From positions 145,444 through 209,443 of IMG/VR virus record IMGVR_UViG_3300043446_003193: 64,000 nt of DNA. One strand, 5' to 3'. The position numbers and the translations under genes are program-made. The first letter of the stretch is position 1. Each line of letters opens with the position of its first letter. The notes under the pieces were generated by a model that was not told the DNA's origin, did no database searches, and saw nothing but the letters and a program-made list of their open reading frames with translations. Of this stretch, positions 17,139 to 34,048 are shown piece after piece.

Positions 17139-20100
17139 TTATTCATAAAAAATACCAAGTATCTGATTTAATGGTGCGAATGTACCTGTAAGTTTATATG
17201 TTTTTCCATTATAAAAGAATACCAGTCCTTCATTTGCCACTATTCTTTCAATTCCACCCAATCTATTCAATCTACTCAATTCTTGTTTTAATTTTTGAAT
17301 TTGTGCAGGATTGCCAGAAGTTTTAACTTGATCGGCAACTGTTTTTAATCGTGATTTCATTGAACGAATTGCCTTATCAGGATGAACCGTCAATACACTA
17401 CCAACAAATTCTAAAACATCTGCACCTACTCCTAAAAATATTTCTTCAAATGGTTTGATATTATCTTTTTGTTGTTTTGCAACATTTACTTTATCATTAT
17501 TCATTGCCCAGTCTTGTAACTTAGGATTTGATATTGTATTTAATCTAAAAGATTTATCACCAAATGCCCATCTTCTAATTAAAGCTTCTTTTGTAAGTTT
17601 ATCAACTTTAACAGGTGCGTTTGATGTAATCCACCAATCCCACCAACTTTGATGATAATCTGCTACATTATCTGAATCTTTTAATCCAAATTCGGATTGT
17701 AATTTTGAAATCTTAGAAAGATATTTTGATTGTTTAGAACTTAAATCTTCTGATTTTGGAATTTCAGTTATTGGTGGTCCTTGAATTGTGTATTTAGATT
17801 GAACATCTGCATTTACTTGCTTAATCATACCTGCTAATACACTCTCTGCTCCATCCACCTTACCAACAGCGTTTCCTTTTTCATCATATTCTATACAATT
17901 GTGAAATACTAAAAGTGCTTGTCCGTAAGGAATAACATTTACCGAAGTTGGCCAAATTACTTCAATATTCATAAATTTGGTTCCTTCACCAAATACTTTT
18001 TCTCTTTGTTTTTGAGATAATGCAGATACTGCTGCTGAAAGGTCTTTCATTGCGTAATTATATGCATCTGTTAAACCACCTCTTCCGCCAAATTTTGATG
18101 CAACATCTTCAATGCCCATTGCACTTGCTCCACCATTTGATAAATGTCCTTTATTTCTAGCTGCAATTAATCTACCATTTTTCCAGCTGATTGCTAACGC
18201 CTGTCCATCGGTTTTTTCTCTTACTACACCTAAATCCCCATTAAGTGCTTTTGTAACGATATCTTTAAGGTGTCCAAATGTCAAATCCATATCATCAAAT
18301 GGATGACTCATATGACCATATGCCCCACCTTCCATTAATAGACCTTCTTTTAAAAATTCAGTTGGTTTTTCATCAAATCTAGGTAGGTTTCTTGCAGAAT
18401 ATTTTACAGTATATTGGGTTTCATCTTCATCACCCCATATTGCATCTGCTATTGGAAAATCCATCTGCGTATATCCACCACTATAATACCAATCATCTCC
18501 TTTATTTACACCATCGTCTGCGTCTAATTTTCTAGTATGTCCTTTTGGTAAATAAGCACCATCGGCTTGAGAATCTGCATCAGCTAATCCACTTATTTCA
18601 TTTATATACATTTCAATATCTTCGTATAATTTTGAAATTTGTTCGTCAAAGTTAGGTTTGATGTTTAATTCTTTTTCCATTTTAGTTATCTCATCATATC
18701 CCATATTTCTCAATGATCTTGCAACATCATTTGCTTTATATCCGTTTGGATTTCCGAATAAGTATGCATTTATTCTTTTTCTGAATGTTGAATTTTTATA
18801 TGCATCAATTAAATTTTTAAAATGAACATCATTGGAACCCATTTCATCTATTTTACGAAATGTAGTTGCCTGTCTTCCATTTATTGTTGGCATTCCATGA
18901 TCATCCTTTCCAATATCTTTAACTTGTACCTTTTTATTTTTAAACTTACCCATTAAAATAGTATCACCCGTATCAACATCTACATTAACATCTTCTTTGT
19001 TAATTTCAATTGCTGCCAGTTGCTTTTTAGCAGATGCTAACGAATCATGAGTTCCTAATCTATCTCCACCATTTTTTGGATATACAACATATTTGTCACC
19101 AACTTTTTTTATGGTTTCGTTTACATTTTCATTGTAGATTTGTTTGTTGATTCTACCATATTCTCTCATTAGAATTCCTGCAACTGCATGTGCTTGGTTT
19201 TCTATTGGAGAACCATCTGCACCATCTTTTTCTAAATTTCTAACTAACCCCAATTCATCTTGCTTTCTATGAACCATTTCATGTGCAAGAGTTCTTAGGA
19301 TATCTGCTGTTAATCTACCTTCGGTTGCAACATATATGGATTTATCTTCAGGATTATATCCACCTAAACTTGTTTTTACTTCTGCGAATTCTCTTCCACC
19401 AACTAATGTAACATTTGGTGTTTCTTTTAATTTTAATCTTTTAGTTGCAAATTCTACAAAATGTTGAATAGATTGTTGTTTTGTTTCTGATAAATTTTCA
19501 TTTAAAGAAAACTTACTAATCATTTTTTTATTATTCCAACTATCTGCTATTTTTTCCGCAATTTCAGGAGTAATATCCATATTTTCTATTCTTTCTGCAA
19601 TTGCGGCTGCAAATATATTTAGTGCACTTGCTTCATCAATATCTTCGGCAAAAATAGCAGCTTTTCCTACACCAGTTGCAACTACTTCTGTTACAGCATG
19701 TGGTATCAATTCCATAGCCGTATGTTTTACCAACCCAGCAGCACCATGTGCCAATCCGCCACCAACTGCTGCAAATAATGCTGTTGTAGCTATTTTAATA
19801 CCAACGGATTTTAAAGCTTTTTTCTGCTTATCATCTAATTTACCACCAGCCATTAAAGTTTTTACACTACTACCAGCTGTTTTAAATGTATCATATTCAT
19901 GCTTCAAACCATGCATAATTGCATGTCCAGCACCTTTTGCTTTGTCCATTATAGCCTGACCCCAACTTCTTCTCTCATCGTGTCCTTCTTTTTTATTTAA
20001 TAACTTAGAAAAAGTTTGTTTTTCTTCTTTACTCCAATTTTTTACTTTTTCTTGTATTCTTTTTACTTGACCTTCTTTTGTATTTCCTGATTTTTCTTTT

Positions 20101-21224
20101 TGTGCATTTTTTTCAGCATCAGATTTTAATTCTACACCAGATAATTTTTGTTCTGGAGGCGGACCTTGTTGGGTATCAGAATCGGTTCCTATTGGAGAAG
20201 TTTTTTCTTTATCTATTTTTCCTTGAGTGGTTTGTCCTTGTTTTGTTGGTTGTCCAGGCTCAGATGGTTTAGCTGCTTGAGTTGCTGCTTTTCCAGGTTC
20301 TTCTTTTTTCTTTGGTTGATTAGCAGGAGCATCGGCTGGCCCAGCTATTTTAGCAGCTTGAATATGTGCAGGATGCTCTTTAGGTAATCGTAATGCATCT
20401 CTTGCTTTAATTTTCTTTTGTTGTCCTTTTGAATTTGTATATGTTATATCAACGTCTAATGCAGGATTTTCAGCTTCTCCAAAATATTGATTTGTAAATT
20501 CTTCAAACATTTCATTGGTAATGTAGTTTTGAATTATTTCAGAAATAGGATCATATACATAATCATCGTCTGTTGTAGCTACTGCTCTAATTTCTTTATT
20601 CTTTTTTTCAATAGCCTCTACATCTTCTTTTGAAGGGTATCCTCTATATAATTCTTCGTTAAGTTTGGTTGTTATCATTTTGAATATTTCTCTATCAAAT
20701 TTTGGATATGCTTTTAAGAAAAACTTTTTAGCTTTTTCTTTATCATTACTTCCCAATCCTTTTCTAACTTGAGTTCCACTAATTGGATTTGGTTCTGGAG
20801 GGATAGGATATGTATAACCAATTTCATCATAACCATATCCAGATTTTCCGTTATATGGTTTGAAATATTTACCTTGTAACCTTGTTGCATCTTTTTCACC
20901 AACTGCTGCAATATAAGCAGTAGTTTTTCCATCAAACTTTCCAAGTATTTCTACCGGTCTATATGGGTTAGAAACTTTAACAAATTTTGAAGCAGGAACT
21001 CCAAACATTGTAGTTGCTATTTCTTTTTTTTCTTTAAAAGTAAATGGTGATTTATCTGAAGATGTATCATTAGAACTTGCTATATAGACATTTGCTTCTC
21101 CAAACTGAGAAACTAATCTTTGATACGCATCATAATGTCCTCTGTGAAATGGTTGAAAACGACCACCGTATATTACGATAGTTTTTTTAACCTCTGGTTT
21201 ATTCACTTCTTTTATTAAATTCAT
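17139..21224 (-). CDS. 1361-aa multidomain protein: HxGH nucleotidyltransferase + HExxH metallopeptidase-like + ATP-dependent ligase-like domain
   Basis: GGRFQPFHRGH and ISGTQVR; RTLAHEMVH..Q; EKTDG, NIEVI, LVFH, EGLVF, YKLTG ligase-superfamily motifs. Confidence 0.75.
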   Translation of the reverse strand: MNLIKEVNKPEVKKTIVIYGGRFQPFHRGHYDAYQRLVSQFGEANVYIASSNDTSSDKSPFTFKEKKEIATTMFGVPASKFVKVSNPYRPVEILGKFDGKTTAYIAAVGEKDATRLQGKYFKPYNGKSGYGYDEIGYTYPIPPEPNPISGTQVRKGLGSNDKEKAKKFFLKAYPKFDREIFKMITTKLNEELYRGYPSKEDVEAIEKKNKEIRAVATTDDDYVYDPISEIIQNYITNEMFEEFTNQYFGEAENPALDVDITYTNSKGQQKKIKARDALRLPKEHPAHIQAAKIAGPADAPANQPKKKEEPGKAATQAAKPSEPGQPTKQGQTTQGKIDKEKTSPIGTDSDTQQGPPPEQKLSGVELKSDAEKNAQKEKSGNTKEGQVKRIQEKVKNWSKEEKQTFSKLLNKKEGHDERRSWGQAIMDKAKGAGHAIMHGLKHEYDTFKTAGSSVKTLMAGGKLDDKQKKALKSVGIKIATTALFAAVGGGLAHGAAGLVKHTAMELIPHAVTEVVATGVGKAAIFAEDIDEASALNIFAAAIAERIENMDITPEIAEKIADSWNNKKMISKFSLNENLSETKQQSIQHFVEFATKRLKLKETPNVTLVGGREFAEVKTSLGGYNPEDKSIYVATEGRLTADILRTLAHEMVHRKQDELGLVRNLEKDGADGSPIENQAHAVAGILMREYGRINKQIYNENVNETIKKVGDKYVVYPKNGGDRLGTHDSLASAKKQLAAIEINKEDVNVDVDTGDTILMGKFKNKKVQVKDIGKDDHGMPTINGRQATTFRKIDEMGSNDVHFKNLIDAYKNSTFRKRINAYLFGNPNGYKANDVARSLRNMGYDEITKMEKELNIKPNFDEQISKLYEDIEMYINEISGLADADSQADGAYLPKGHTRKLDADDGVNKGDDWYYSGGYTQMDFPIADAIWGDEDETQYTVKYSARNLPRFDEKPTEFLKEGLLMEGGAYGHMSHPFDDMDLTFGHLKDIVTKALNGDLGVVREKTDGQALAISWKNGRLIAARNKGHLSNGGASAMGIEDVASKFGGRGGLTDAYNYAMKDLSAAVSALSQKQREKVFGEGTKFMNIEVIWPTSVNVIPYGQALLVFHNCIEYDEKGNAVGKVDGAESVLAGMIKQVNADVQSKYTIQGPPITEIPKSEDLSSKQSKYLSKISKLQSEFGLKDSDNVADYHQSWWDWWITSNAPVKVDKLTKEALIRRWAFGDKSFRLNTISNPKLQDWAMNNDKVNVAKQQKDNIKPFEEIFLGVGADVLEFVGSVLTVHPDKAIRSMKSRLKTVADQVKTSGNPAQIQKLKQELSRLNRLGGIERIVANEGLVFFYNGKTYKLTGTFAPLNQILGIFYE

Positions 21225-21277: not shown

Positions 21278-21309
21278 CAAACATAGTGAAAATTTTTGAA
21301 ATTTCCAAT
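21278..21309 (-). promoter_or_regulatory. Bacteroidota sigma70-type promoter (ATTG-N20-TATGTTTG)
   Basis: Perfect TAnnTTTG -7 element; a late motif also lies at 21228-21236. Confidence 0.6.
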
Positions 21310-22697
21310 TAAAGTTTTACATTTATCATCCAAGCATTTTCTGCAAATTGTTCTTTTGATACTAATTCGTATTGAACTTGATTTATACCATCTTCCTTAT
21401 AATTTATTTTTCCTTCCTGCATTTCCTTAACAAATCTTCTTTCGTTTTTTGCAGTTGGTTCACCCTTTATCCATTCTCCATTTACAAATCCCTCACTAGG
21501 ATGTGGTAATGCGTAAAATCTTCCATTTCTTCTATATGGTGTATTATTACTACTTACTTTAAATGTTTCATTTGTTATCTCTACATTATGTATCAATAAA
21601 TCAGAAATTACATTATTTTTATCTTTTAAAAAATCAGATATATTTTCAGGTAAAACTACATCATTGTAAATTTTAATATCTGCAATCTTTCCTTTTAAAT
21701 AATTTGCTATAATTGGATTACATTCACTGCATGGATTTTTACCAATTAAAATATCATTATTATATTTTTTTAATTTACCTTCAAATTCATGCGGTTTATA
21801 TTCCAATGTTTCTGTTCTTGTATTTTTAATTAAATTACTATTACAATAAAAATATATTTTATTTTCTTTAGAGTCTACCGAAACTGTTATCCATGTCCAT
21901 TCTCCAAATCCTCTTTTTATCCATGCATAAATTTGATTATCGTTTTGAGAATATAAAGAAGCGGATATTGCTCTAGAATTATTAAATCCTATAAAATAAG
22001 ATTCTTTTTTATCTATACTTAAAATTGGATATTCTACATATCGTTTATCTTTTATACCTATTAACCATTCTTTATATTTTTCAGGCTGATCTTCAATTTT
22101 ACACAAAATAGATAATGTATGTGATTGGGATAATAATTCCGATATACCAGTATCTTTTGGAATCGTTATATAAGAATTCTCTCCATCAAAATTAAAACAA
22201 GGAATATCATTGTATTCAAAAAATAAATTATCTTCTGTTAATCCTTCAAAACGACATCTCCAAAATAGGTCATCATCTTCCATACCCCAATCCCAATATT
22301 CATTAGAGTAACCATTTGTTGCTTCTACCTGTTCTTTATTCATTAATACAACACCACCGAAGTATTGTTCATAGTTTAATCTATATTTGTATTTAGATAC
22401 GGCGGTTGCAATATGTGTTGGAAACTTGTCTGGATATGAATAATCACAACTATCGTTTTCCGGTAACATATCTACATCGTGAAAAGCAACATAATCACAT
22501 CCATCTTCAAATGCATGTTTGGCTGCAATATTTTTCATCGCACCTCTATTGAATAATTTATCATCCGTTTGGTGTACAATATAAAATTGATGTGGAATTC
22601 CTTTTTTGTTTAAAAATTTTGTAAGATGAGGAACTAACATTTTAAGATGATATTCCCTATCTCTATAAGGAACACATATTCCGAGTTTTTTTATCAT
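21309..22697 (-). CDS. GT7 (beta-1,4-galactosyltransferase-like) glycosyltransferase with inserted LamG/ConA domain
   Basis: VPYRDR, FNRG..KN, HDVD, YFGGV, NGYSN.YW.WG.EDDD; insert FDGENSYI...W..ITV...IGK...LKGKIADIKIYN. Confidence 0.85.
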   Translation of the reverse strand: MIKKLGICVPYRDREYHLKMLVPHLTKFLNKKGIPHQFYIVHQTDDKLFNRGAMKNIAAKHAFEDGCDYVAFHDVDMLPENDSCDYSYPDKFPTHIATAVSKYKYRLNYEQYFGGVVLMNKEQVEATNGYSNEYWDWGMEDDDLFWRCRFEGLTEDNLFFEYNDIPCFNFDGENSYITIPKDTGISELLSQSHTLSILCKIEDQPEKYKEWLIGIKDKRYVEYPILSIDKKESYFIGFNNSRAISASLYSQNDNQIYAWIKRGFGEWTWITVSVDSKENKIYFYCNSNLIKNTRTETLEYKPHEFEGKLKKYNNDILIGKNPCSECNPIIANYLKGKIADIKIYNDVVLPENISDFLKDKNNVISDLLIHNVEITNETFKVSSNNTPYRRNGRFYALPHPSEGFVNGEWIKGEPTAKNERRFVKEMQEGKINYKEDGINQVQYELVSKEQFAENAWMINVKL

Positions 22698-22699
22698 AA

Positions 22700-23164
22700 C
22701 TATTTTCCTTTAGGAGACACATAAATTGTATCTCTTATAAGTATTTGTTTTTCCGTATAAGGAGCATATACGGATGTATTATAACATTTAATATCTAAAA
22801 AATGACCAGCTTTTGTTGTTGGCATATTGACATATTCTATATTATTTATTTCTATTTCATTTAATTTATAATCTAATATTTTTATATTATTTCCTTCCTT
22901 TATTTGGGTATATAATTCATTTATTCTTATTTCCAATATTTCATCTGATTCATTTTTATATAAAACATATGAATCTGGATGAAAAATAATTCCATCAATT
23001 TTGTAATAGTTTGGTTCTTTCAAAACTTTAGTAAACTCTATTGTTGCGGTTTTATATTTTTCCTCAACAGGGCAATATCCTGTTAATGAGTTTACCTTTG
23101 GCTTTAAATCAATAATATTTTTAATTATTAATTCGTTATATTTTATATTCTCAAATAAATTCAT
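22700..23164 (-). CDS. Hypothetical protein, possibly a degenerate stand-alone Hint domain
   Basis: 154 aa; colinear similarity by eye to the adjacent Hint domain (see findings). Confidence 0.4.
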   Translation of the reverse strand: MNLFENIKYNELIIKNIIDLKPKVNSLTGYCPVEEKYKTATIEFTKVLKEPNYYKIDGIIFHPDSYVLYKNESDEILEIRINELYTQIKEGNNIKILDYKLNEIEINNIEYVNMPTTKAGHFLDIKCYNTSVYAPYTEKQILIRDTIYVSPKGK

Positions 23165-23166
23165 AA

Positions 23167-26100
23167 TTAAGGAGTTATTTTACCACCTGGCCCTAAAACG
23201 TTGTGTACTAATATATTATTTGCAAAGTAAGTATCATTTGTTTCAACATCTAATGAAATAAATTCATCTAATTCATCAACTCTTATTTTTTCTTCAATCA
23301 TTTCCCAGTTACCATCTAAATTATACATCATATCACCAACTATAACGTCTTCTGCTCTTAAAAATTTATATTCATTATCTCTTTTTATAAAAATAGGATG
23401 TTCAAAAGTTATTTTTAATTTATCATTTATTACATAATGATAATGCCAGACTCCACTTGTAACAGATTTTACGGCACTCATAGAATCTACATAATCAAAA
23501 GTATTTGTAGAAAATGTTTTCCATGCATCTTCTTCTTCAGAAAATCCATCAATAGAAATATTTTTTAATAAATCCCCTTCTATCAAATCTTCAACATTTT
23601 TTTCACTACCATCCCACATTAAAATTTTTGTACCTTTTGCTAAACACGTTCCGCCACCTGTACAATCACAACCTGCTCCTGTGTATTTATATATCAAACA
23701 AGAGGAATTTGCTGTTCCAGAACACCCACTTTCAGATACTGCATATATTTCATAATATATTGGGTTATCACATGCAATACTACTTATACTAAAAGCATAT
23801 GATGTACCAAATGAACGAGAACCTTGATTTAATATACTACCTTCCGGTCCATAATCAAATGTACATTTATACCAAACTACATAATAAGTCGCCGCATTTT
23901 GTGCGTTTGCAGTACCTGTTCTGGAAAATGCGTATGTTAAAGTACCACAAGTTGGAGTATCCAATGAAACAGTAGGTGCAGTTATATTTCCAGATGCAGC
24001 TACTGCATTATATGAAATTGCACTATTTGTTGCGGTTGTTGATAATAATGTATCTGATGAATTATATATTTTCGCTCTAAAATACATAGTAGTACCACTT
24101 GTTAGTGATATAAAAGCAGCATAATTAGTATTTGCTGTAATACTTGTAAATGTTTCTGCCGCCGTCCAAGTTGAATTATCCGTACTTTTTTCTATTACCA
24201 ATTTTGTAGCAGTATCAATTTGACCAACCGAATATGTAGCAGTTACTCCACCACATACTACTGATTTAGATACAAATGATAATGTATTTACTACACCTCT
24301 ATTTCTTAATACAATATAATAATCAGTTCCTTGAGAAGTATCTGTTGATGATTTTTGCCCATGTATACGATATGTAGTTGTTACTCCTAAAGTAGCACTA
24401 CTTACAACTCTTGCAGCTAAATAGTAATTACCATTTGTATATGGTAGACTGTTTCCAGAAGTATCACCTGTATTATATAATTGGAAGGTTTTTATATTTA
24501 GCGCACCTTCACCCTGTTGTGGAGATGTATTATCTGCTGTTTCCCAAAGTCCATTATATGTGTTTTGAAACATTCTAAACATACCATATGCGCCGGTTCC
24601 TGGTGCATTTCCGGAATCTACTGATACTGTCATTGTAGTATACGCACCTGGGAAATTACTCCAAGTGTATTTATTATCCATTGATAATACGGTATGTATG
24701 GATGCCAAAGCCTTTGTGTTCGGTTCTAAATTATCAAATGTAATTACAGAAGAATTTGTACTAAATGTACCGCCAGTTCTACCACTCCAGGTATCTAAAT
24801 TTATAATTCTAGTAGGAGTATATGTTGGTCCTTGATATGCGTATATACCATATAGTGTTGCAGGGGTATTTAATGTAAAAGTATAATCTAAATCTTCAAC
24901 TAATTGATTTGCAGTCCAACTAGAATATTTTATTGTACCCCAGTCATCGGTTGCTTTTACTCTCATTTTATATGTACTACCAAAACTCAAACCAGTAAAT
25001 GTAATACCCGATTGTGTTGTAAGAACAGTACCATTAGTATCTGCTATTTGGTATTCAACTGTTATATTATCAGCAGTTAAATCAATAGTTCCATCATTTG
25101 AATCATATGTTAATAATCCTGCATATATACTCATTTCAGTATATCCTTTTGTAAATGCTACACTAGGAGTTCCTGTTATTGATGCTAATCTTTTACCCTT
25201 TACTGTTATTGAAATATCTTTAGACCTTTCACTACCAGCATTAATATATAAAGTCCATGCATTAGTTGTACCGGAGTAAGTATATAAGTTACCCCACCAT
25301 GTATAAGTTACTGTTCCTCTTGATGAAGAACTTAAAGTAGTTTTTGATGTTGTTGCCAACTTTCTACAAAATGTAGTACTGGTATTTGTTCTTATCAAAT
25401 AAGTGCCATTATACGGGTTTGCACCATTAAAACTAAGTGGAGATGCTTGCATTCTATTATTATCTAACCAAACATACCAATATCCACCCTGTGAGTTTGT
25501 CTCAGTTGGACCGTTTGTTGTATATGATGCATCTAATGTAAAATTAACTCCTCTAATAGCATATCCGTCAACAAACCCACTTCCTCCTTTTACCACATCA
25601 ATTGTTCCAGGTTCTCTAGTAACAGTAACTGTTTTATTAGTTAAAGTATGATAATAATATAATCCTGAACTTATTGTATATGTTAAATAAACCGAACCAT
25701 ATCCATCACCAATTGTAGATGAATTACAAATTGCATCATATAAACTAAGTGCAGAAAAAGAAAAAGAAGCTACTGAATCTGGGTCTATTTGTGCATCAGT
25801 TAAACTTTGTCCTCCCGCACTTCCCCCATTTGGATAATATGCATCCAATCTTGCAGATATTTTAGTGAAATTGCCAGATGATCTGGTTACTGAAAAAACA
25901 ACAGACTGAACTTGAGAAAGTGTACCGGAATTTATGTTAGATGTTAAAGAATATCCGTATCCTTGATTTGGATACCCATATACTGTCACACTTGTTTCAT
26001 TAAAATCAGATTGTCTATATGTACCACCAGATGCTTTTACATGATAATACCAAGTTTGATCAGCAGATGGAGCAGTCCAACCATTATGTGCTGTTGTATA

Positions 26101-27963
26101 AGTACCACTATTCAAATCTGCATAAGTTCCTCCAGACCCTACTTTGTATTGAAAGTTATCATAAGTAAATGCAGTTGCTAATGATTTTGTTATACTAATA
26201 GAACCATTTGAATATTCTCTTCCAGTTACCCAACTTGCACCCAATCCAATTTGACTTTGATTTATTTTAAAACGAACACTAAAATTATCAGTTAATACAA
26301 ATCCATTTCCATCTGTAATTGTGGCCGTATGTGTTGATGTTCCATCATTTGCAGATGTCGCAGGATTATTAACAGTTATAGTAATTACTCCAGATGCCGT
26401 TTTTGCTCCTGATGCGGAAACCGTGCTATCGGTTGACGTAGCAGAAACACTTGTAACAGAAAATCCATTATCATTTGAACCATTAATAGTAACCGTTCCT
26501 GTAAAAGTTCTATTAGCTCCTGTTAAAACATAATCTTGATCATCAATTGTTAAAACTCCCTTTTGTGGTATTAATATATCTCCGGTTTCTGTATATCCGG
26601 ATACAAATGTAGAATTGCCATCGCTTCTTCTTGCTCTTACTCTTGCTTTTGCATATTGTGCAGTTGTAGTTTTACCTGCAATAGTTACCGAAGGTGTTAC
26701 ATTTGTACCGGCTGCAACCAAAGAAGTCCATGCTCCATAAGAACCACCACTATCTTTAACAGCATAATCTATATCATAATTTAAAGTAGTTCCACTTACA
26801 GCTGCAGTCAAAGCAGTGACCGTTACACCAAATGATTGTCCAAAAGCAGAATATGCTGCACTAATAGATGGTGAAACCATAGCAACAGTTACATTCGTAG
26901 TTGTATGATTTCTAACACTACTATTACTACTATTTGTAATATTTACTCTAAGAGATTGACTACCTAAAGTATTATAATAAATTGATAAATTTTGAGAAGT
27001 TGATGTAGAAATACTTGCTCCTGTTAATACCCAATTATAAGATATTGCAATAGAATCGGGATTATATAAAACTGTTGAAGTAACAGAATATGCAACAAAA
27101 GGTTCTACACTCGTAGAAGCACCAATTGATACCGCCATTGGTCTTCTAAATGTAGTTGCCGTAGTACTTGCCGTATCAAATGGGTTTGCCGAATCTTTGA
27201 CCACAATAGTATAATCATCATCGGCCGTATTACTTGAATTATTAAAAGTTGCAGTATTTACATCTGCAGAACCATAACCTGCTCCATTAAAATTATAATA
27301 ATACGGAGAAACACCACCTGCAACATTCACAGTAAAATCTACGGAACCGGTAGTATAATTATACGTTCCTGCGCCAGTAAATGATGGAGAAGTTGTAACT
27401 GATGTAATTGTTAAATCAACTGCATTTACAAAAACTGTTTTAGAATCATTTGCTTGTTTATTTGAAGAGTTTATTCTAAGTTCTAATCGTAATGTGTTTG
27501 TAGAATTTGGTACAATATATGTATTACTATTATCAACATAAAAGTCAGAAGCATTAGTTACATTTCCGGTAAGAGTTGCAGGAAATACATTTGTTCCAGT
27601 ATATACACCATTTACCCAGATTTTAATATATGCCGTTTCTCCGGACTGCATACCCGTCACAGTATATGTAAAATCTAATCTTTTACCTGATTGAGCATTT
27701 GTATTAGCAGGACTAGTTAAAGTATTTATTGTAATTGCAGGAACTTTACCTTCAAATTCTACAAACTCATATTGACTTCCAGTAGGCCTTGCTCCAGTAC
27801 TTGGGTTTAATACTCCGACAGTATTTGGTAAATCTCTGACAGTATTTGGGTCAACTGTACCGGTCAAAAATTGATTTGCAACATATGAACCACTTACTGT
27901 CGTAGTTGCAGTGTTAAGACCGGCAGAAGAACCTAAATCTCCAATTCGTATATTACTTGCCAT
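23167..27963 (-). CDS. Long Ser/Thr-rich fibre/adhesin (Ig/FN3-like beta repeats) with C-terminal Hint (BIL/hedgehog-like) domain
   Basis: Beta-rich T/S/G composition; GGGT/CLAKGTKI...TFEHP...SLDVE...YFANNILVHN at 23200-23646. Confidence 0.8.
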   Translation of the reverse strand: MASNIRIGDLGSSAGLNTATTTVSGSYVANQFLTGTVDPNTVRDLPNTVGVLNPSTGARPTGSQYEFVEFEGKVPAITINTLTSPANTNAQSGKRLDFTYTVTGMQSGETAYIKIWVNGVYTGTNVFPATLTGNVTNASDFYVDNSNTYIVPNSTNTLRLELRINSSNKQANDSKTVFVNAVDLTITSVTTSPSFTGAGTYNYTTGSVDFTVNVAGGVSPYYYNFNGAGYGSADVNTATFNNSSNTADDDYTIVVKDSANPFDTASTTATTFRRPMAVSIGASTSVEPFVAYSVTSTVLYNPDSIAISYNWVLTGASISTSTSQNLSIYYNTLGSQSLRVNITNSSNSSVRNHTTTNVTVAMVSPSISAAYSAFGQSFGVTVTALTAAVSGTTLNYDIDYAVKDSGGSYGAWTSLVAAGTNVTPSVTIAGKTTTAQYAKARVRARRSDGNSTFVSGYTETGDILIPQKGVLTIDDQDYVLTGANRTFTGTVTINGSNDNGFSVTSVSATSTDSTVSASGAKTASGVITITVNNPATSANDGTSTHTATITDGNGFVLTDNFSVRFKINQSQIGLGASWVTGREYSNGSISITKSLATAFTYDNFQYKVGSGGTYADLNSGTYTTAHNGWTAPSADQTWYYHVKASGGTYRQSDFNETSVTVYGYPNQGYGYSLTSNINSGTLSQVQSVVFSVTRSSGNFTKISARLDAYYPNGGSAGGQSLTDAQIDPDSVASFSFSALSLYDAICNSSTIGDGYGSVYLTYTISSGLYYYHTLTNKTVTVTREPGTIDVVKGGSGFVDGYAIRGVNFTLDASYTTNGPTETNSQGGYWYVWLDNNRMQASPLSFNGANPYNGTYLIRTNTSTTFCRKLATTSKTTLSSSSRGTVTYTWWGNLYTYSGTTNAWTLYINAGSERSKDISITVKGKRLASITGTPSVAFTKGYTEMSIYAGLLTYDSNDGTIDLTADNITVEYQIADTNGTVLTTQSGITFTGLSFGSTYKMRVKATDDWGTIKYSSWTANQLVEDLDYTFTLNTPATLYGIYAYQGPTYTPTRIINLDTWSGRTGGTFSTNSSVITFDNLEPNTKALASIHTVLSMDNKYTWSNFPGAYTTMTVSVDSGNAPGTGAYGMFRMFQNTYNGLWETADNTSPQQGEGALNIKTFQLYNTGDTSGNSLPYTNGNYYLAARVVSSATLGVTTTYRIHGQKSSTDTSQGTDYYIVLRNRGVVNTLSFVSKSVVCGGVTATYSVGQIDTATKLVIEKSTDNSTWTAAETFTSITANTNYAAFISLTSGTTMYFRAKIYNSSDTLLSTTATNSAISYNAVAASGNITAPTVSLDTPTCGTLTYAFSRTGTANAQNAATYYVVWYKCTFDYGPEGSILNQGSRSFGTSYAFSISSIACDNPIYYEIYAVSESGCSGTANSSCLIYKYTGAGCDCTGGGTCLAKGTKILMWDGSEKNVEDLIEGDLLKNISIDGFSEEEDAWKTFSTNTFDYVDSMSAVKSVTSGVWHYHYVINDKLKITFEHPIFIKRDNEYKFLRAEDVIVGDMMYNLDGNWEMIEEKIRVDELDEFISLDVETNDTYFANNILVHNVLGPGGKITP

Positions 27964-30900
27964 TAGATAAAACCTGTTTTAAAGTATTTACTTCTTTTTT
28001 TAAATTTTGTATTTGTTTAACCATAATTGGAATTAGTTCATTATATTTTATGGTTAAATACTCTCCCATTATTCTTCCATCTGTTAAATTTGGATATATT
28101 TTTTCAACATCTTGTGCAATAAATCCATAATGTTTTTTATTTTCACTATCAGAATTCCAACTATATGCAACCGGATGTAATCTATCCATATCTTCAATTT
28201 CAGTTTCATCTATATCAACTATATTTTTTTTCAATCTTATATCAGAACTAAGTGATGTTGAAAAACCGGCAATATCACCTTTTACATGCAATTCTCCATA
28301 GTGAGCAAAATATCCTGCAGATTTTATATTTGCATTAGCAGCTGTTGGTGTAGCAATATCTTCAACTTTAAGAAAATTACCAGTACTATCCTGTGAACTA
28401 TTAAATAATGCCTGTAATCCTCTTTCTGAAATTTCTACTTGTTTTGTTAATGAAGTAGCTGTTAAAGATAATCCTTTTGCATAATAATTTGTTGAAGATG
28501 GTGAATATGAATCTACTCCAATACTTTCTGCCCAAATTGCATATCCAGCTGGTATAGTACCAAATCCAAATAAAGTAAATGAATCATAATAATCAATATG
28601 CCATCTTGTTTTTCTATAATTCGCAACCAAACCATTTGATTTTGTAGTGGATATTTGTAATGGGTTTGTTGTTTTACCAAGAGTTATAAATTGAAAAGAA
28701 GTATCTGCAAATTCTTCTTGAGTACTTGTAGTAGATGGAGAAACTGTTCTAGAAATTGAACCAATTGATGTTCCACCATAAGATAATGTACTTGTTACAG
28801 TTGCAGTACCAGTAACCGAATCAAAAGAAGTATAAAAATCAATATATTGTCCATCCATTTGTGAAAGAGTAGTATATGATGTTCCTTTTTTAGTATTAAA
28901 ATATGATATAAAAGCAGTAACAGCTGCTTCAGCACTACCACCTATCCATCCTCTAGTGATAGAAGAATAATAATTTAAATTCGTTGGGTCTTGACTTAAA
29001 TTATATTTTATATGATATGCAATATTTAGAGCTGCTTGATCAACAGTTGAAAAAGTACCAGTAGAAGCTACATATGTATACTCCATTGTTGGAGCATTGT
29101 TCCATTCTAAATCAATTCTATATTTAACCGATGCGTTAATTGAATATGTTGATGTAGCAGATAAACTGGTATACATATTAGTACTTGTTGCCGACAAAGT
29201 AGCTACCGTAGAACCATTAACATTATACAAATACAAATTTTGTGGTGTTGAAGTTCCTATACTAAAATAAGTTTGAGCGGTAGTTGCCGTTATTGCACTA
29301 CCTGCTCCTGGAACTGTTGTTAACAATTCACCTGGATGAATAAGTACACGGTTTCCTGCATAGGTACTTTCCCCTGTAATTTGAATATAATTATCAGCCC
29401 CAGTTCCTCCAGCATTTAAAGTAATTTTATCTTTAGAAATGCTATTTTGACCAATAACCCACCCACCAATAGTACCATCAGTAGCAGTTATTTTTCCAGA
29501 TATGTTCGCGTTGGAAGCTACTAAAGCACCTGCAGTATCTACTCTAAATGGAGCAGAGTTAAATGCCGTATTACCCGCATGAAATCCTGCAATTGACATT
29601 ACCGCTTGTGAATTACCGGATGAATTACCTGCTATTACTCTTGATTGACCACCATCTAATATCACACCATTTGTTGCAGTACCACCAATTAATTTTCCTG
29701 CTTGAATTTCAAATCCACCAATTGATCCAGTTTGAGCAGTTAATGTTGTTGCAGATATTGCACCACCAATATCAACTATATTTGTTGCAGATGCATCGTA
29801 TTTAAAATAATTACTACCACTAACAAAACTTACTTTTGGTACAAATGAACTTCCACTAATTCCTAACCAAATACCATTAGTACCATATGATTGAACTCCT
29901 TGACCTATTGAAACAAATGGTTTGGTAGTTCCACCTGCTAATGTTATATTTGCAGCAGAACCAGATGCATTAGTACCAATATTTAAAGTATTTTTAACAT
30001 ACGATTCATCAAATATTGCAATCTTAGCTGCAACAAAGAAATCTTGTGTTCCCAAATATTCCCAATAAGAATTGCTTGCTCCATCGGTAGGTGCATTTCC
30101 AGTTGTTTGCTGTAATGTTGCGTAATATTTTGTAACACCTCCTGAACTTTGATAAACGGCATCTCTTCTTGAAGAACCCGCAACAGTTGTGTAATAATAA
30201 GTTGTGCCTGCTGCATATTCTCCTCTTAACACAATACCAGGACCCGTCGCTCCGGTATTTCCATCAGTACCATCCGATGAAACATTTACATTATGTGTTT
30301 TATAAAAAGTTGTAGAAGTTCCTTCCGAATCTACATATGATCCGGTAATGCTTACAATTAATCCACTTGTAGAAGATGGTGTAGAAGGTGTTATTGTTGT
30401 ATATCCATCACCATCTACACCGGCATTTGTACCATTTGTTACAGAAGATATTCTAAATGAAGGTATAACATATGGAGAAGTGGCATCATACGCATATGCA
30501 CTACCACCTTCATTTACATATAATTTAAATGAAGAAGGAGTACCATATGAACCTGCTGTACTTTTTGTAATAGTTTGTCCATCTTTTTCAATTGATACAA
30601 CTACCGCCGGTGGTGCCGCTAATGCTTTAGAAACGGTAGCTACAACATTTTTAGTACCAGATGTACCTTCACTATCGGTATAGTTTACAGGTATTGTTAC
30701 TTGAGCAGTTGAACCAGTTATTGAAGATGCCGTTGATGTTATTGTTATAACATTTGACGAAACTGTTCCTGCCAATCCATTTGTATATGTTGGTGTACCT
30801 ATTGAAGTAAATCTACTTGTACCAGATTCCAAAGCAGTTATCGTTAATGCGGTTGGAGTAGCAGAACCACTTGTTTTTGAATTTGCATTTATTGATTGTG

Positions 30901-33900
30901 CAGATGGAGATACTGCTACTAATACATTTGGTGTACCTGCTTTAGCTTTTGAATATGTTACTAATTTTACAAATGTACTATCACTTCCTCTACCATCTCT
31001 GTAAGTTACTTTTAAATTTATACTACCACTATCAGCGGATAACGCGGTTATAGAATAGTTGTTATTTGTAAGTACTGCTGTTACATTTGAAGATGATGAA
31101 ATACTTGCACTAAATTTATTGTTTCCAATTGTAGATGCGTATGAAATATCTTCACTTCCAACTTTTACTGATATAGAACCACTACTTGCTAAAAACCCAC
31201 CAAAAACAGTTCCACCAGAATATGCAGGAAATGTTGTATTTTCGTTTGATACTGTCACTGCAATTTGTGATTCAGCTATTACCGGAGTAATTGTAATTGT
31301 ATCACTATAAACTGCATTATTTAAATCATAAGCAGTAAATGTATATGTTGTTGCGCCAGATGAATATGAATAATCACTACCATTTATACTATATGATTGT
31401 ACACCGGTGGTATTATTGTTAGAACCAACGGTCAAAGCTGGTTTACTACTACCACTAGTTACAGTAATTTCATTTGTAGTACTTCCTAAATTATTTCTTT
31501 TTACATCAATTGTTATAGTTTGTCCAGATGGTGATAAACTCAAATCGGTCATTTTATAAAAAAACTGATTAGCGTTAGAAACTGCATTTAAGTTTTTACT
31601 CTTATCACCTTTTAATACACCTTCCAATTGTACCGAAGATGAATATCCTCCTTTATTAAAATAATAAGTTCCTTTATGTGTAAGTTGGGTAGGAGTAGCA
31701 TATGACCAAGATGCTACATTTGTACCTAGCATTGCAACATCGTGTTGATCATCTCCACTAAAAACACGATAAACAGACTCGGTAGATTTTCCTATATATT
31801 CGGTAGATATTAAAGCTAATTTTGGTAAATAAGAACCAGAAGTTATGTAAATACTACCAGAAACAATGTTATTTGTTAGCTTTATATCAATAAAATCATT
31901 AAGTTGTGCAGGAACATTATTATCGTCTGGATCATACACAAATTGATTTTTATTAGCAATTGCAATGAAATTTTGACCATCAATACCATCTGCACCAACA
32001 GCTCCTTGATCAACTCTATAAATGTTTACCAAATCTCTTACATCTTCGCAAGATGCCGTATATTGAACTCTACTAATTTTTGATGAAGATATTGATCCAG
32101 TAAAATTAGAAACCAAAAGAGTTGCGGATGTTTCCGTTACATTTGTTAATAAACCAGGATAAAAAGGTTCAGATGCATAAACCGATGGATTAATGTAATC
32201 ACCATTTGCATCAAATGCTGAAGAGTAGAATGTTACAGAACCGGTTAATCCTATTTTTGAAATATCAAAATTTATTGAAGATACTCCAATTGTTTCTCCT
32301 GAGCCAGAAAAACTAAATAGTGTATTATCTGGAGTTACTGTTAATGATTTTTGAACAATTGTATCTGTTCCACCAGTAAATGTAATTTCTTTTTCTAAAG
32401 TAACAGGTACATAATTGTTATTAATATCGTAAAATTCAAAACGAAAATCGTAAGTATCATTATTTACTTTAGTCGGAACATTTACATTTAGAGTAACTTC
32501 ATTAGGAGAAAAGTTTGTTTCTTGAGAAGCTCGTAAACTTATGTTTGATAAATACCATTCTCCTTGATGAATATTAAAAAATATTTGTCCCTGCCCATCA
32601 GTATCTGGTTTAAAATTTATTTGTTGTTTATCAAATCTTCTAAAAGATTCACTAACATTAAATTCACCTAAAAGTTTTCCATATCCAAGATCAGAGTCCT
32701 CAACTACGAATGCCGGTCCAACACCAAACACATTTAATTTTCCATAACCAAAAGAAGATGATTGCAATAAAAGACTGAAATCTAATTGATATTCAGTATT
32801 ACTTAGAAAATCAATATCATTGTGATTATAAAAAACTCTCTGTGGATGTTGTGTTGTATTTAAAGTATTATCGTCTTGTAGTTTTACTGAAGATGCTAAT
32901 ACTGAATCATTTTGTGTAGCAGTATAATATGTATTTTCTTCATGTTTTTTATATTTCCAAAAATCATCTATTATTTTTTGAGATGAAAATTGTCCTATTC
33001 TAACATTTACACTTCCACTATATGCATCAGTTTGAAATAGTTCATTTGATTCTAACTGAATATCTTCTAATAAACTATAATTTCCAATATCTGATTTTCT
33101 TTTACCAAATATTTTCAAACGATTTACATCACCACTAAATGTTTCCAAATTAGCTATTTTTATTTTAGCATAAGAAGAACTAATTGCAGAGTTTGTTAAA
33201 GTTACACTTTCGTTATATGGTAATGTAAATGATGCGGAAGAAAAATCAGTTACATATTGTACGGCGTTTGTGGCATTTGAAGATGTTTCATAATAAGGAA
33301 TTGTTGCTAATGCTTTTTTAGAATTAACAACATCTTTTATAATTGTAGAATATGATTGATTTAATCCAGTTATCGTAATTGTTTCACCTTCCATAGATGA
33401 TGAAAAATTACTTCCACTAATTTTTAATTCATAAATTGTATCACCTTTGAAAGTTCTAAAATTTGAACCAGATGTAGGTTGTACCGAAACACCATCAACA
33501 CTTCCACTAATAGTTACTCTATTTACAGTTCTATTGTATATTGGTAAAATTGTTTCAGTTATATCTACCGTCGGTCTACGATAGAAACGAATCTTTGTTG
33601 TATTTGCAATAATAGGATTTACATTCACTACTTTTTGCCATCTAACATTATATTGATTTTCCCAGTTTGAAGGGATTGGTGTTAGTAATCCATTAGCATC
33701 TTCATATTCACTTAATTCTCCTAATATAGTAATTGTACATGGACCAAATGCAGTATCTGGATAAACATATACTGCCACTACTTTTGAAGTTCCTTCATAA
33801 TATTCAGGAATACCTTCTCCTGGTTCGTGATAAATTACATTTCCTAATGCATCTTTAATTTCTATCTTTATAAGAGTATCGGCAACTAATTCAGGAGAAC

Positions 33901-34048
33901 CCTGAATTAAAAAAGAGTTTTTACCACCAGAAAAAGTTCCAGGTAGTTCGGTGATTCTAAAGTATCTACTATTTGGATCAGTATCTTCTAAAAATATATT
34001 ATATCTCTCTAAATTTTCTGGAAATAGAGTCTTTTTAAGAATGGCCAT
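27953..34048 (-). CDS. Long tail fibre with C-terminal peptidase S74 intramolecular chaperone
   Basis: SDIRLKKNI...PV.Y.W...GFIAQDV..IYP...YNELIP.MVKQIQ.L; GSIGGF/GTIGGW fibre repeats; short Gly-X-Y stretches. Confidence 0.88.
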   Translation of the reverse strand: MAILKKTLFPENLERYNIFLEDTDPNSRYFRITELPGTFSGGKNSFLIQGSPELVADTLIKIEIKDALGNVIYHEPGEGIPEYYEGTSKVVAVYVYPDTAFGPCTITILGELSEYEDANGLLTPIPSNWENQYNVRWQKVVNVNPIIANTTKIRFYRRPTVDITETILPIYNRTVNRVTISGSVDGVSVQPTSGSNFRTFKGDTIYELKISGSNFSSSMEGETITITGLNQSYSTIIKDVVNSKKALATIPYYETSSNATNAVQYVTDFSSASFTLPYNESVTLTNSAISSSYAKIKIANLETFSGDVNRLKIFGKRKSDIGNYSLLEDIQLESNELFQTDAYSGSVNVRIGQFSSQKIIDDFWKYKKHEENTYYTATQNDSVLASSVKLQDDNTLNTTQHPQRVFYNHNDIDFLSNTEYQLDFSLLLQSSSFGYGKLNVFGVGPAFVVEDSDLGYGKLLGEFNVSESFRRFDKQQINFKPDTDGQGQIFFNIHQGEWYLSNISLRASQETNFSPNEVTLNVNVPTKVNNDTYDFRFEFYDINNNYVPVTLEKEITFTGGTDTIVQKSLTVTPDNTLFSFSGSGETIGVSSINFDISKIGLTGSVTFYSSAFDANGDYINPSVYASEPFYPGLLTNVTETSATLLVSNFTGSISSSKISRVQYTASCEDVRDLVNIYRVDQGAVGADGIDGQNFIAIANKNQFVYDPDDNNVPAQLNDFIDIKLTNNIVSGSIYITSGSYLPKLALISTEYIGKSTESVYRVFSGDDQHDVAMLGTNVASWSYATPTQLTHKGTYYFNKGGYSSSVQLEGVLKGDKSKNLNAVSNANQFFYKMTDLSLSPSGQTITIDVKRNNLGSTTNEITVTSGSSKPALTVGSNNNTTGVQSYSINGSDYSYSSGATTYTFTAYDLNNAVYSDTITITPVIAESQIAVTVSNENTTFPAYSGGTVFGGFLASSGSISVKVGSEDISYASTIGNNKFSASISSSSNVTAVLTNNNYSITALSADSGSINLKVTYRDGRGSDSTFVKLVTYSKAKAGTPNVLVAVSPSAQSINANSKTSGSATPTALTITALESGTSRFTSIGTPTYTNGLAGTVSSNVITITSTASSITGSTAQVTIPVNYTDSEGTSGTKNVVATVSKALAAPPAVVVSIEKDGQTITKSTAGSYGTPSSFKLYVNEGGSAYAYDATSPYVIPSFRISSVTNGTNAGVDGDGYTTITPSTPSSTSGLIVSITGSYVDSEGTSTTFYKTHNVNVSSDGTDGNTGATGPGIVLRGEYAAGTTYYYTTVAGSSRRDAVYQSSGGVTKYYATLQQTTGNAPTDGASNSYWEYLGTQDFFVAAKIAIFDESYVKNTLNIGTNASGSAANITLAGGTTKPFVSIGQGVQSYGTNGIWLGISGSSFVPKVSFVSGSNYFKYDASATNIVDIGGAISATTLTAQTGSIGGFEIQAGKLIGGTATNGVILDGGQSRVIAGNSSGNSQAVMSIAGFHAGNTAFNSAPFRVDTAGALVASNANISGKITATDGTIGGWVIGQNSISKDKITLNAGGTGADNYIQITGESTYAGNRVLIHPGELLTTVPGAGSAITATTAQTYFSIGTSTPQNLYLYNVNGSTVATLSATSTNMYTSLSATSTYSINASVKYRIDLEWNNAPTMEYTYVASTGTFSTVDQAALNIAYHIKYNLSQDPTNLNYYSSITRGWIGGSAEAAVTAFISYFNTKKGTSYTTLSQMDGQYIDFYTSFDSVTGTATVTSTLSYGGTSIGSISRTVSPSTTSTQEEFADTSFQFITLGKTTNPLQISTTKSNGLVANYRKTRWHIDYYDSFTLFGFGTIPAGYAIWAESIGVDSYSPSSTNYYAKGLSLTATSLTKQVEISERGLQALFNSSQDSTGNFLKVEDIATPTAANANIKSAGYFAHYGELHVKGDIAGFSTSLSSDIRLKKNIVDIDETEIEDMDRLHPVAYSWNSDSENKKHYGFIAQDVEKIYPNLTDGRIMGEYLTIKYNELIPIMVKQIQNLKKEVNTLKQVLSNGK

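What the first reader, a model, noticed from the sequence alone, without database searches (positions are those of the whole stretch)
22700..23164. Possible catalytically dead stand-alone Hint paralogue next to the fibre Hint
Seen by eye: the 154-aa ORF is about the same length as the upstream 149-aa Hint and is colinear with it: KNIIDL~KNVEDL; YYKIDG.IIFHPDSYVLYKNES~HYVINDKLKITFEHPIFIKRDN; IRINEL~LRAEDV; GNNIKILDYKLNEIEI~GDMMYNLDGNWEMI; FLDI~SLDV; YTEKQILIRD~YFANNILVHN. It lacks Cys1, the block-B His and the terminal HN. Inference: a pseudo-Hint acting as partner, regulator or adaptor. Identity is low, so this is tentative.
Basis: inference. Interest (0 to 1): 0.65.

Follow-up and report, generated by a model that had tools for sequence, protein, structure and literature searches.

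The report
Dead stand-alone Hint next to active Hint
A small phage gene encodes a protein predicted to have the self-cutting "Hint" (intein/Hedgehog) fold but none of its cutting residues. In a clade of freshwater phages it always follows a giant virion-type protein that ends in an intact Hint, so it is probably a duplicated Hint turned into a non-enzymatic helper.

Summary
The ORF at 22700-23164 (- strand, 154 aa) is real and under purifying selection (dN/dS 0.23 against its closest DNA relative). It belongs to a small family found only in relatives of this 209-kb freshwater T4-like phage.

Pairwise similarity to the upstream 149-aa Hint is at chance level (BLASTP E 1.8; shuffle z 0.4).
- **Fold:** an AlphaFold2 model (pLDDT 79.8) matches almost only Hint-fold structures. 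The best is the C. thermocellum BIL domain 2lwy (Z 11.9, rmsd 2.7 Å, 121 residues), and 33 of 35 hits at Z>=2 are Hint-fold.
- **Catalytic residues:** all canonical positions are replaced. There is no Cys1, block B TxxH has become H-x-[DN]-S, and the terminal HN has become [RK][DG].
- **Synteny:** in every relative whose upstream DNA is intact, the gene directly follows a large protein ending in an intact Hint. A GT7 glycosyltransferase follows wherever the downstream DNA was examined.
- **Origin:** related phages carry two or three Hints in tandem, and Phage NCTB has an analogous stand-alone degenerate Hint. This points to duplication and gene fission.

A partner or adaptor role remains inference; the complex prediction gave no verdict. 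This is a new variant of a known kind, of moderate interest.

The parts
22700..23164 (-). Pseudo-Hint gene (P0001, 154 aa; stop codon at 22700-22702)
   Evidence: ORF and translation. AF2 model pLDDT 79.8, pTM 0.75. Hint-fold matches. dN/dS 0.23 against L002.
22970..22981 (-). Codons for H62-P63-D64-S65, the equivalent of Hint block B (T-x-x-H)
   Evidence: hhalign places H62 opposite the block B Thr and S65 opposite the block B His. H62 is conserved in 11 of 12 sequences (Tyr in one) and S65 in 11 of 12 (Ala in one).
22730..22735 (-). Codons for R144-D145, the equivalent of the terminal His-Asn of a Hint
   Evidence: The last strand I-L-I-[RK]-[DG] lines up with I-L-V-H-N of the neighbouring Hint. 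VIA alignments end at model residues 145-146, opposite the last residues of inteins.
23165..23166 (-). Two-base spacer between the stop of the Hint-ended gene and the ATG of the pseudo-Hint gene
   Evidence: Sequence read directly. The spacing is tight in relatives too: 2 nt in L002, 3 nt in L003 and a 1-nt overlap in L005. The frame relation is not conserved, so no programmed fusion is indicated.
23200..23646 (-). Intact Hint domain of the upstream protein (Cys1440 to Asn1588, 149 aa), with Cys1, T-F-E-H and V-H-N
   Evidence: Weak Pfam hits to Intein_splicing and PT-HINT. The family profile hits BIL domain 2lwy at E 7.8e-8 and Tetrahymena BIL2 at 3.5e-7. The catalytic residues are invariant in relatives.
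23167..27963 (-). Large Ser/Thr/Asn-rich protein (P0002, 1598 aa) that carries the Hint and a 10-aa tail after His-Asn
   Evidence: ORF and translation. No PHROG, NCBIfam or strong Pfam family for the N-terminal 1439 aa.
21309..22697 (-). GT7-type glycosyltransferase fused to a ConA/LamG-like domain; starts 2 nt after the pseudo-Hint stop
   Evidence: Glyco_transf_7N 6e-21, Glyco_transf_7C 1e-20, Laminin_G_3 4e-7. Conserved downstream of the pseudo-Hint in L003, L005 and L014.
27953..34048 (-). Tail fibre protein (2031 aa) with a C-terminal Peptidase_S74 intramolecular chaperone; overlaps the start of P0002
   Evidence: phrog_1980 tail fiber 8e-17. PF13884 Peptidase_S74 7.8e-16 at residues 1935-1988.

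Best explanation
The gene encodes a stand-alone, non-catalytic Hint-fold protein (a 'pseudo-Hint').

Origin (inferred). It most likely arose by tandem duplication of the autoprocessing Hint at the C-terminus of the upstream 1598-aa virion-type protein. A stop and a start codon then separated the copy, and the catalytic residues were lost.

The upstream Hint (inferred from chemistry). It keeps Cys1, T-x-x-H and His-Asn but is followed by Val rather than Cys/Ser/Thr. By established intein and BIL chemistry it should therefore cut itself off its 1439-aa cargo (N-S acyl shift, then thioester resolution) without splicing.

The pseudo-Hint (inferred).
- It is translated from the same operon, 2 nt after the upstream stop, so it is probably made in step with the precursor.
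- It cannot perform either cleavage step.
- I propose it acts as a binding module for the maturation or assembly of that protein. Its few conserved polar residues lie in the blocks that form the catalytic cleft of true Hints (H62, S65, P135-Y136-[ST]137, [KR]144). They could hold the precursor's Hint or junction region, or the newly made C-terminus.

What is shown and what is inferred.
- Shown: the gene is real and under constraint; the predicted fold is Hint; the catalytic residues are replaced; synteny is strict wherever the upstream DNA is intact.
- Inferred: the duplication origin (about 0.6), loss of all catalysis (about 0.85), and a role as accessory of the Hint-ended protein (about 0.4).
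For: **Fold.**
- AF2 model with pLDDT 79.8 and pTM 0.75.
- Foldseek PDB: the top 31 hits are all inteins or BIL domains, with TM up to 0.57/0.63.
- Foldseek-independent VIA search of 48,161 chains: 2lwy Z 11.9, rmsd 2.7 Å, 121 aligned; 33 of 35 hits at Z>=2 are inteins, BIL, Hedgehog or Vint.
- ESM Atlas neighbours are PT-HINT clusters, TM 0.65-0.69.

**Sequence link.** hhalign score 24, E 0.003, 82 colinear columns, with 0 of 200 shuffles reaching it. The neighbouring Hint's best PDB relative by sequence is the same 2lwy BIL domain.

**Dead residues.** Family-wide replacement at all canonical positions.

**Real gene.** 12 distinct sequences down to 33% identity, all intact and 145-154 aa long. 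dN/dS is 0.23 against L002.

**Synteny.**
- L002 to L005 and eight IMG/VR loci all have a Hint-ended large protein directly followed by the pseudo-Hint (one of the eight lies on the same contig as L002).
- The GT7 gene follows in the four loci examined: the window, L003, L005 and L014.
- Hint and pseudo-Hint diverge in parallel. Identity to the window is 84/35/47% for the Hint and 77/35/33% for the pseudo-Hint, while the GT stays at 82-87%.

**Duplication precedent.**
- Three canonical Hints in a row in L030.
- Hint plus a second Hint in L023-type fibres.
- Phage NCTB has a 153-aa stand-alone 'intein domain protein' directly after a Hint-ended collagen-like tail protein. It is similar to that neighbouring Hint at BLASTP 5e-6 and is the top BFVD fold match of my model.
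Against: - No direct evidence of binding. The complex prediction gave no verdict, which counts neither way.
- One related locus (L015) has a Hint-bearing ORF and the GT but no pseudo-Hint. The protein is therefore not indispensable to every Hint module.
- Sequence similarity to the Hint is marginal, so origin from this particular neighbour rather than another Hint is not proven.
- The residue-level equivalences come from a weak profile alignment and from alignment ranges, not from a printed structural superposition.
- The first 23 residues of the model are of low confidence.
- No RNA or proteome data exist for this phage.
Confidence: 0.6

Rival explanations
1. The Hint fold has been re-used as a binding module for a job unrelated to the neighbouring Hint. 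It might serve as an accessory of the downstream GT7-LamG glycosyltransferase (recruiting it to the Ser/Thr-rich protein), or as an independent virion or host-interaction protein.
For: - The GT7 gene starts 2 nt after the pseudo-Hint stop and is conserved in the loci examined.
- The complex prediction with the Hint region gave nothing (not evidence either way).
- Small stand-alone Hint-fold proteins occur in other phages in other contexts.
Against: - L015 keeps the GT without a pseudo-Hint.
- The pseudo-Hint evolves at the fast rate of the Hint and pre-Hint region, not at the slow rate of the GT.
- It is never seen without a Hint-ended protein immediately upstream in loci where the upstream DNA is intact.
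Confidence: 0.22
2. It is a decaying leftover of a tandem Hint duplication with no function of its own.
For: All catalytic residues are lost. It is absent from one related locus. The family is small and fast-evolving.
Against: The ORF is intact and of constant length in 12 distinct sequences down to 33% identity, with a conserved start, core and C-terminal motif. dN/dS is 0.23 in the closest pair. The AF2 model is confident, as expected of a foldable protein.
Confidence: 0.07
3. It is still chemically active in a non-canonical way. It might be the long C-terminal piece of an atypically split Hint that is completed by a short strand from another protein, or it might use H62/S65 for cleavage or ligation.
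For: - VIA alignments start at model residue 5-9 opposite intein residue 11-16, so the first Hint strand may be missing.
- Atypically split inteins (6zgq, 6vgw, 9hth) are among the good matches.
- H62 and S65 are nearly invariant.
Against: - There is no terminal Asn (Gly in most of the clade), no +1 nucleophile, and only 4-9 residues after the last strand.
- H62 is Tyr and S65 is Ala in one member each.
- The N-terminal 23 residues are simply poorly modelled.
- No partner carrying a short N-fragment was identified.
Confidence: 0.05
4. The Hint resemblance is an artefact of structure prediction from a shallow alignment, and the protein has another beta-rich fold.
For: - Only 9 sequences were in the alignment.
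- No Pfam, PDB-sequence or PHROG hit to any Hint family.
- TM-scores are moderate at 0.5-0.69.
Against: - No templates were used, and all five models scored 71-80 pLDDT.
- Two independent aligners and four libraries return almost only Hint-fold proteins.
- An independent profile-profile signal is colinear with the same fold.
Confidence: 0.05

Closest known systems
Bacterial intein-like (BIL) domains / PT-HINT (e.g. C. thermocellum BIL, PDB 2lwy; Tetrahymena BIL2, 6tmm/6y75; Pfam PF07591)
   Same: Same predicted fold; these are the best structural matches (Z 11.9 and 10.3). The neighbouring active Hint is also closest to these by sequence.
   Different: BIL and PT-HINT domains sit inside larger proteins and keep Cys1, TxxH and HN to cut or ligate their flanks. 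This protein is a separate 154-aa ORF with none of those residues and no Pfam-level sequence match.
Phage NCTB BN7874_135, a 153-aa 'intein domain protein' (LT598654.1)
   Same: A stand-alone Hint-sized ORF directly after a tail protein that ends in an intact Hint (BN7874_136). It lacks Cys1 and the block B His, and it is the top BFVD fold match of my model.
   Different: It keeps the terminal V-H-N and is still recognisably similar to its neighbour (BLASTP 5e-6). It shows no significant sequence similarity to the family here (hhalign E 0.16). It is probably an independent, younger instance of the same kind of event.
Tandem Hint arrays at the C-terminal end of phage fibre-like proteins (IMG/VR loci L030, L023-L029, L031)
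   Same: Two or three Hints follow one another after a large structural protein. This is the arrangement from which a split-off second Hint could arise.
   Different: There the extra Hints are in the same polypeptide and keep His-Asn, and mostly Cys1 (or a Ser at that position). Here the second copy is a separate gene and is degenerate.
Tail fibre assembly chaperones encoded just downstream of fibre genes (Phage_tail_APC/Tfa; T4 gp38, from general knowledge)
   Same: Same genomic position and size class. In L023-type loci the gene after the Hint-containing fibre is a Phage_tail_APC protein (5.9e-16).
   Different: No sequence or fold relation. The pseudo-Hint has no Pfam hit, and the resemblance is positional only.
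Peptidase_S74 intramolecular chaperone of tailspikes and fibres
   Same: A self-removing C-terminal module on phage fibres. It is present on the fibre gene just upstream in this window and is a functional analogue of what the active Hint probably does.
   Different: A different fold and chemistry, and it is not related to the pseudo-Hint.

Membership tests
Hint (Hedgehog/intein) superfamily, structural membership | Beta-horseshoe Hint fold with pseudo-twofold symmetry | tested here: met
   AF2 model. VIA: Z 11.9, rmsd 2.7 Å, 121 of 138 residues of 2lwy; 33 of 35 hits at Z>=2 are Hint-fold, including Hedgehog 1at0 at Z 9.4. Foldseek PDB, BFVD and Atlas agree. This is a predicted structure, not a solved one.
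Hint superfamily, sequence membership | Significant match to a curated Hint/intein profile (Pfam Hint, Hint_2, PT-HINT, Intein_splicing) or to solved Hint sequences | tested here: not met
   No Pfam hit for any of 9 members. No PDB sequence hit with the profile. Only a weak match to a home-made Hint profile (hhalign E 0.003, probability 11%).
Catalytically active Hint (intein, BIL, Hedgehog type) | Nucleophile Cys/Ser/Thr at position 1, preceded by an N-extein | tested here: not met
   The protein begins at Met1 with M-[NDE]-[LI]. There is no N-extein and no conserved nucleophile in the first residues.
Catalytically active Hint (intein, BIL, Hedgehog type) | Block B T-x-x-H | tested here: not met
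   The aligned positions read H62-x-[DN]-S65 and are conserved as such. The equivalence rests on a weak profile alignment and matching secondary-structure order.
Catalytically active Hint (intein, BIL type) | Terminal His-Asn for Asn cyclisation | tested here: not met
   The positions hold [RK][DG] after the conserved I-L-I strand.
Catalytically active Hint | Autoprocessing activity | not testable with these tools
   Needs expression and mass spectrometry.
Split-intein fragment | A partner gene supplying the complementary fragment, plus terminal Asn and a +1 nucleophile | tested here: not met
   No Asn and no +1 Cys/Ser/Thr. No partner fragment was identified; a search for a short fragment was not made.
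Tail fibre assembly chaperone (Phage_tail_APC / Tfa) | Match to the family profile | tested here: not met
   No Pfam or PHROG match. Only the position downstream of a large structural gene is shared.

The most novel reading that the evidence does not exclude
The pseudo-Hint is a dedicated trans-acting partner of the active Hint. It would dock on the precursor by using the old catalytic cleft, or by completing or swapping a strand as split inteins do. It would then decide how and when the thioester at Cys1440 is resolved. One option is gating cleavage until assembly. Another is directing transfer of the 1439-aa cargo's C-terminus to another nucleophile, possibly linked to the adjacent glycosyltransferase, in the manner of Hedgehog or BUBL ligation. 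That would be a two-gene enzyme/pseudoenzyme Hint system in a virus.
Probability: 0.12. Interest if true: 0.8.

Novelty: new variant of a known kind. Interest (0 to 1): 0.5.

Why it matters
Hint domains are studied as self-cutting and self-ligating modules in inteins, Hedgehog, BIL and pretoxin domains. A conserved, catalytically dead, free-standing copy paired with an active copy has, as far as my literature searches show, not been described.

If the pair works together, it would be a simple natural example of pseudoenzyme control of protein autoprocessing. It could also be a possible handle for controllable cleavage or ligation tools.

More modestly, the survey shows two things:
- C-terminal Hints, single or in tandem, are a recurrent maturation module on large phage surface proteins.
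- They spin off separate genes, which helps annotation of 'hypothetical' ORFs after such genes.

Tried and rejected
**Family and sequence searches that returned nothing for P0001**
- Pfam, PHROGs, NCBIfam and PADLOC gave nothing above noise.
- PDB sequence search with the protein and with the family profile found no Hint.
- tblastn against 50,697 phage records found nothing.
- The ESM Atlas search by features gave no usable hit.

**Searches that found only the small family**
- The word-index search found 3 close relatives.
- The exhaustive HMMER search of 1.84 billion representatives found 8 proteins. Two were weak multi-stretch matches in longer proteins, which I take for composition effects. 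No fused forms were seen.

**Similarity tests at chance level**
- Pairwise BLASTP and shuffle tests against the Hint.
- The first small-profile hhalign.
- Profile comparisons with ORFs that follow Hint-ended proteins in Alexandravirus pEa_SNUABM_2, Phage NCTB (the 159-aa ORF) and IMG/VR loci L022, L023, L030 and L031. None was similar; L023's is a Phage_tail_APC chaperone and L030's a SET-domain protein.

**Predictions that gave no usable result**
- Complex prediction of the pre-Hint plus Hint region (309 aa) with the pseudo-Hint gave no verdict (score 0.00). This is not evidence for or against binding.
- AF2 of the pre-Hint plus Hint region from a 4-sequence alignment gave pLDDT 49.9. It was unusable and was not searched.

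**Idea rejected**
- A programmed frameshift or read-through fusing the pseudo-Hint to the Hint protein. The frame relation differs between loci: a 2-nt spacer in the window and L002, a 1-nt overlap in L005, and the same frame with a 3-nt spacer in L003.

**Other**
- Literature searches found no description of fibre-terminal Hints or dead stand-alone Hints in phages.
- Sequencing-run search found freshwater metagenomes only and no RNA runs.

Full report
**Setting.** The window is the last 64 kb of a 209,443-bp IMG/VR virus record that CheckV rates complete. It has about 30% G+C, and every gene in the window lies on the minus strand. PHROG matches identify a T4-like myovirus: major head protein, portal, large terminase, baseplate wedge, primase and an SbcCD-like nuclease. 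The capsid protein is about 54% identical to those of Microcystis phage Mel-JY01 and Flavobacterium phage immuto. Near-identical DNA occurs in freshwater metagenomes, and no RNA run holds it.

**The observation.** ORF 22700-23164 (-) encodes 154 aa (P0001).
- It starts 2 nt after the stop of a 1598-aa protein (P0002, 23167-27963).
- It ends 2 nt before a GT7-type glycosyltransferase fused to a LamG-like domain (21309-22697).
- P0002 ends with a 149-aa Hint running from Cys1440, through T-F-E-H, to V-H-N1588, followed by 10 residues.
- Pfam sees this Hint only weakly. A five-sequence profile of it hits the C. thermocellum BIL domain 2lwy (7.8e-8) and Tetrahymena BIL2 (3.5e-7).
- The residue after His-Asn is Val, Ile, Ala, Leu or Phe in the relatives. 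By known intein and BIL chemistry this is therefore a cleaving Hint, not a splicing one.

**Is the similarity more than chance?** At the pairwise level it is not. BLASTP gives E 1.8, and alignment scores fall within 2000 shuffles. hhalign with the first small alignments gave probability 0.15. After I collected more members (12 pseudo-Hints, 19 Hints), the result changed:
- hhalign aligned P0001 42-134 to Hint 59-141 over 82 colinear columns (score 24, E 0.003).
- None of 200 column-shuffled controls reached this score (mean 11.6, max 20.4).
- Column shuffling is a liberal control, so I treat this as weak support that becomes meaningful only together with the fold.

**The family.** The word search found three close relatives. 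The exhaustive HMMER search added members at 46, 35, 33 and 31% identity, and no fused forms. A scan of IMG/VR for relatives of the Hint added five more distinct pseudo-Hints.
- All are 145-154 aa long with a conserved start.
- They share a hydrophobic core and a C-terminal motif P-Y-[ST]-x(3)-I-L-I-[RK]-[DG].
- dN/dS between the window and L002 is 0.23, against 0.12 for the Hint and 0.42 for the pre-Hint region. More distant pairs are saturated at synonymous sites.
- This is a real gene under constraint.

**Fold.** AlphaFold2 on the nine-sequence alignment gave pLDDT 79.8 and pTM 0.75. Residues 1-23 are poorly modelled and the rest is mostly above 80.
- Foldseek against the PDB returned only inteins and BIL domains in the top 31 hits.
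- VIA-align, which does not depend on Foldseek, compared the model with 48,161 chains. It found 35 hits at Z>=2, of which 33 are Hint-fold proteins. The best is 2lwy (Z 11.9, rmsd 2.7 Å, 121 residues), and Hedgehog 1at0 scores Z 9.4.
- The nearest ESM Atlas clusters are PT-HINT proteins with TM 0.65-0.69. One is a viral cluster of 172-aa proteins.
- BFVD returns phage Hint proteins.

**Catalytic residues.**
- The protein begins at Met with no N-extein. VIA alignments start at model residue 5-9 opposite intein residue 11-16, so the Cys1 strand is absent or unmodelled.
- In the profile alignment the block B Thr position holds H62 and the block B His position holds S65.
- The terminal H-N positions hold R144-D145, and across the family [RK][DG].
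However, a nearly invariant His sits three residues earlier.
- The few conserved polar residues (H62, S65, P135-Y136-[ST]137, [KR]144) lie in blocks that meet at the catalytic cleft in true Hints. That last point is general knowledge of the fold, and I could not print a superposition. It suggests a constrained cleft used for binding rather than chemistry.

**Synteny.**
- In L002, L003, L004, L005 and in eight IMG/VR loci of the near clade (Hint 41-85% identical), a large protein ends in an intact Hint plus 5-10 residues, and the pseudo-Hint ORF follows at once. One of the eight (L013) lies on the same contig as L002.
- The GT7-LamG gene comes next in the loci examined.
- Identity to the window falls in parallel for the Hint (84, 35, 47%) and the pseudo-Hint (77, 35, 33%) in L002, L003 and L005. 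The GT stays at 82-87%.
- One exception is L015. There the S74-type fibre is followed by a 230-aa ORF (75 Cys-rich residues, a run of 11 Gly, and a canonical Hint) and then the GT, with no pseudo-Hint.
- One low-coverage contig (L006) carries a member with a foreign N-terminal half and no upstream Hint. It is probably a chimera.

**Origin.** More distant phage proteins carry Hints in tandem.
- L030 has three canonical Hints in a row.
- L023-L029 have a Hint followed by a second one that begins with Ser and ends S-H-N, then a 270-aa tip domain, then a Phage_tail_APC chaperone gene.
- L032-L060 have a Hint followed by a 108-aa C-terminal domain.
- Jumbo phages (Alexandravirus, Phage NCTB and others) also end collagen-like virion proteins in a Hint.
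- In Phage NCTB a Hint-ended tail protein is followed by a 153-aa stand-alone 'intein domain protein'. It lacks Cys1 and the block B His but keeps V-H-N. It is still similar to its neighbouring Hint (5e-6) and is the best BFVD match of my model.
- Tandem duplication of a terminal Hint, then fission and decay of catalysis, is thus a documented path. The family here is a more degenerate product of that path.

**Function.** What the pseudo-Hint does is not shown. The complex prediction with the pre-Hint plus Hint region gave no verdict. A model of that region was too poor to use. My preferred reading is a non-catalytic accessory of the Hint-ended protein. It rests on strict adjacency, tight spacing, parallel divergence, and the usual role of small genes after fibre genes. 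The rivals are a role with the glycosyltransferase or elsewhere, a relic, residual non-canonical chemistry, and a prediction artefact. They are weighed in their own sections.

**Verdict.** The upstream protein is not proven to be a fibre. This is a new variant within the Hint superfamily and is of moderate interest.

Noticed in passing
G000:C1:~21.9-23.7 kb (locus L008:967-2490, minus strand; outside the window): A 507-aa ORF elsewhere in the same phage gives a weak match to the Hint profile (E 2.8e-4). By eye its C-terminal half looks Hint-like (…V-M-G-D-G-S… and an I-E-H-N near the end) without an obvious Cys1, and it ends in a Cys-rich tail. No Pfam family hits it.
   Followed up: partly
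window 23647-23700 (-), just upstream of Cys1440; also L003 and L005: A conserved C-x-C motif and a Gly-rich linker immediately precede the Hint's Cys1 in all relatives (C-D-C or C-N-C, then 3-6 small residues, then Cys1). L015 has a run of 11 Gly instead.
   Followed up: no
L015:2779-3471: In one related contig the Hint sits on a 230-aa ORF of its own, with a 75-aa Cys-rich N-terminal part. It lies between the S74-type fibre and the GT7 gene, and there is no pseudo-Hint. The Hint's cargo is thus highly variable (75 versus 1439 aa).
   Followed up: partly
L030:2890-~4240 and L023:3001-~4740: Phage structural proteins with three canonical Hints in tandem (L030), or with a Hint plus a Ser-initiated second Hint followed by a 270-aa tip domain and a Phage_tail_APC chaperone gene (L023-L029, L063).
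   Followed up: partly
window 21309-22697 (-): A eukaryote-type GT7 (beta-1,4-galactosyltransferase-like) domain fused to a LamG/ConA-like domain. It is far better conserved (82-87% aa) than its fast-evolving neighbours. It could glycosylate the Ser/Thr-rich 1598-aa protein.
   Followed up: no
window 17139-21224 (-): A 1361-aa multi-domain protein with an N-terminal cytidylyltransferase-like domain, a long low-complexity Lys/Glu/Gln-rich middle, and a C-terminal part containing a K-T-D-G motif. By eye the motif resembles nucleotidyl-transferase (ligase) motif I.
   Followed up: no
window 34325-37471 (-): A single 1048-aa ORF matches both the SbcD-like (residues 5-334) and the SbcC-like (279-1047) nuclease subunits. 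It appears to be a fused Mre11-Rad50-type protein.
   Followed up: no
L006:710-1105: A family member (P0010, 131 aa) has an unrelated N-terminal 45 residues and no Hint-ended gene upstream. It lies on a contig with 0.76x coverage and is probably an assembly chimera.
   Followed up: no
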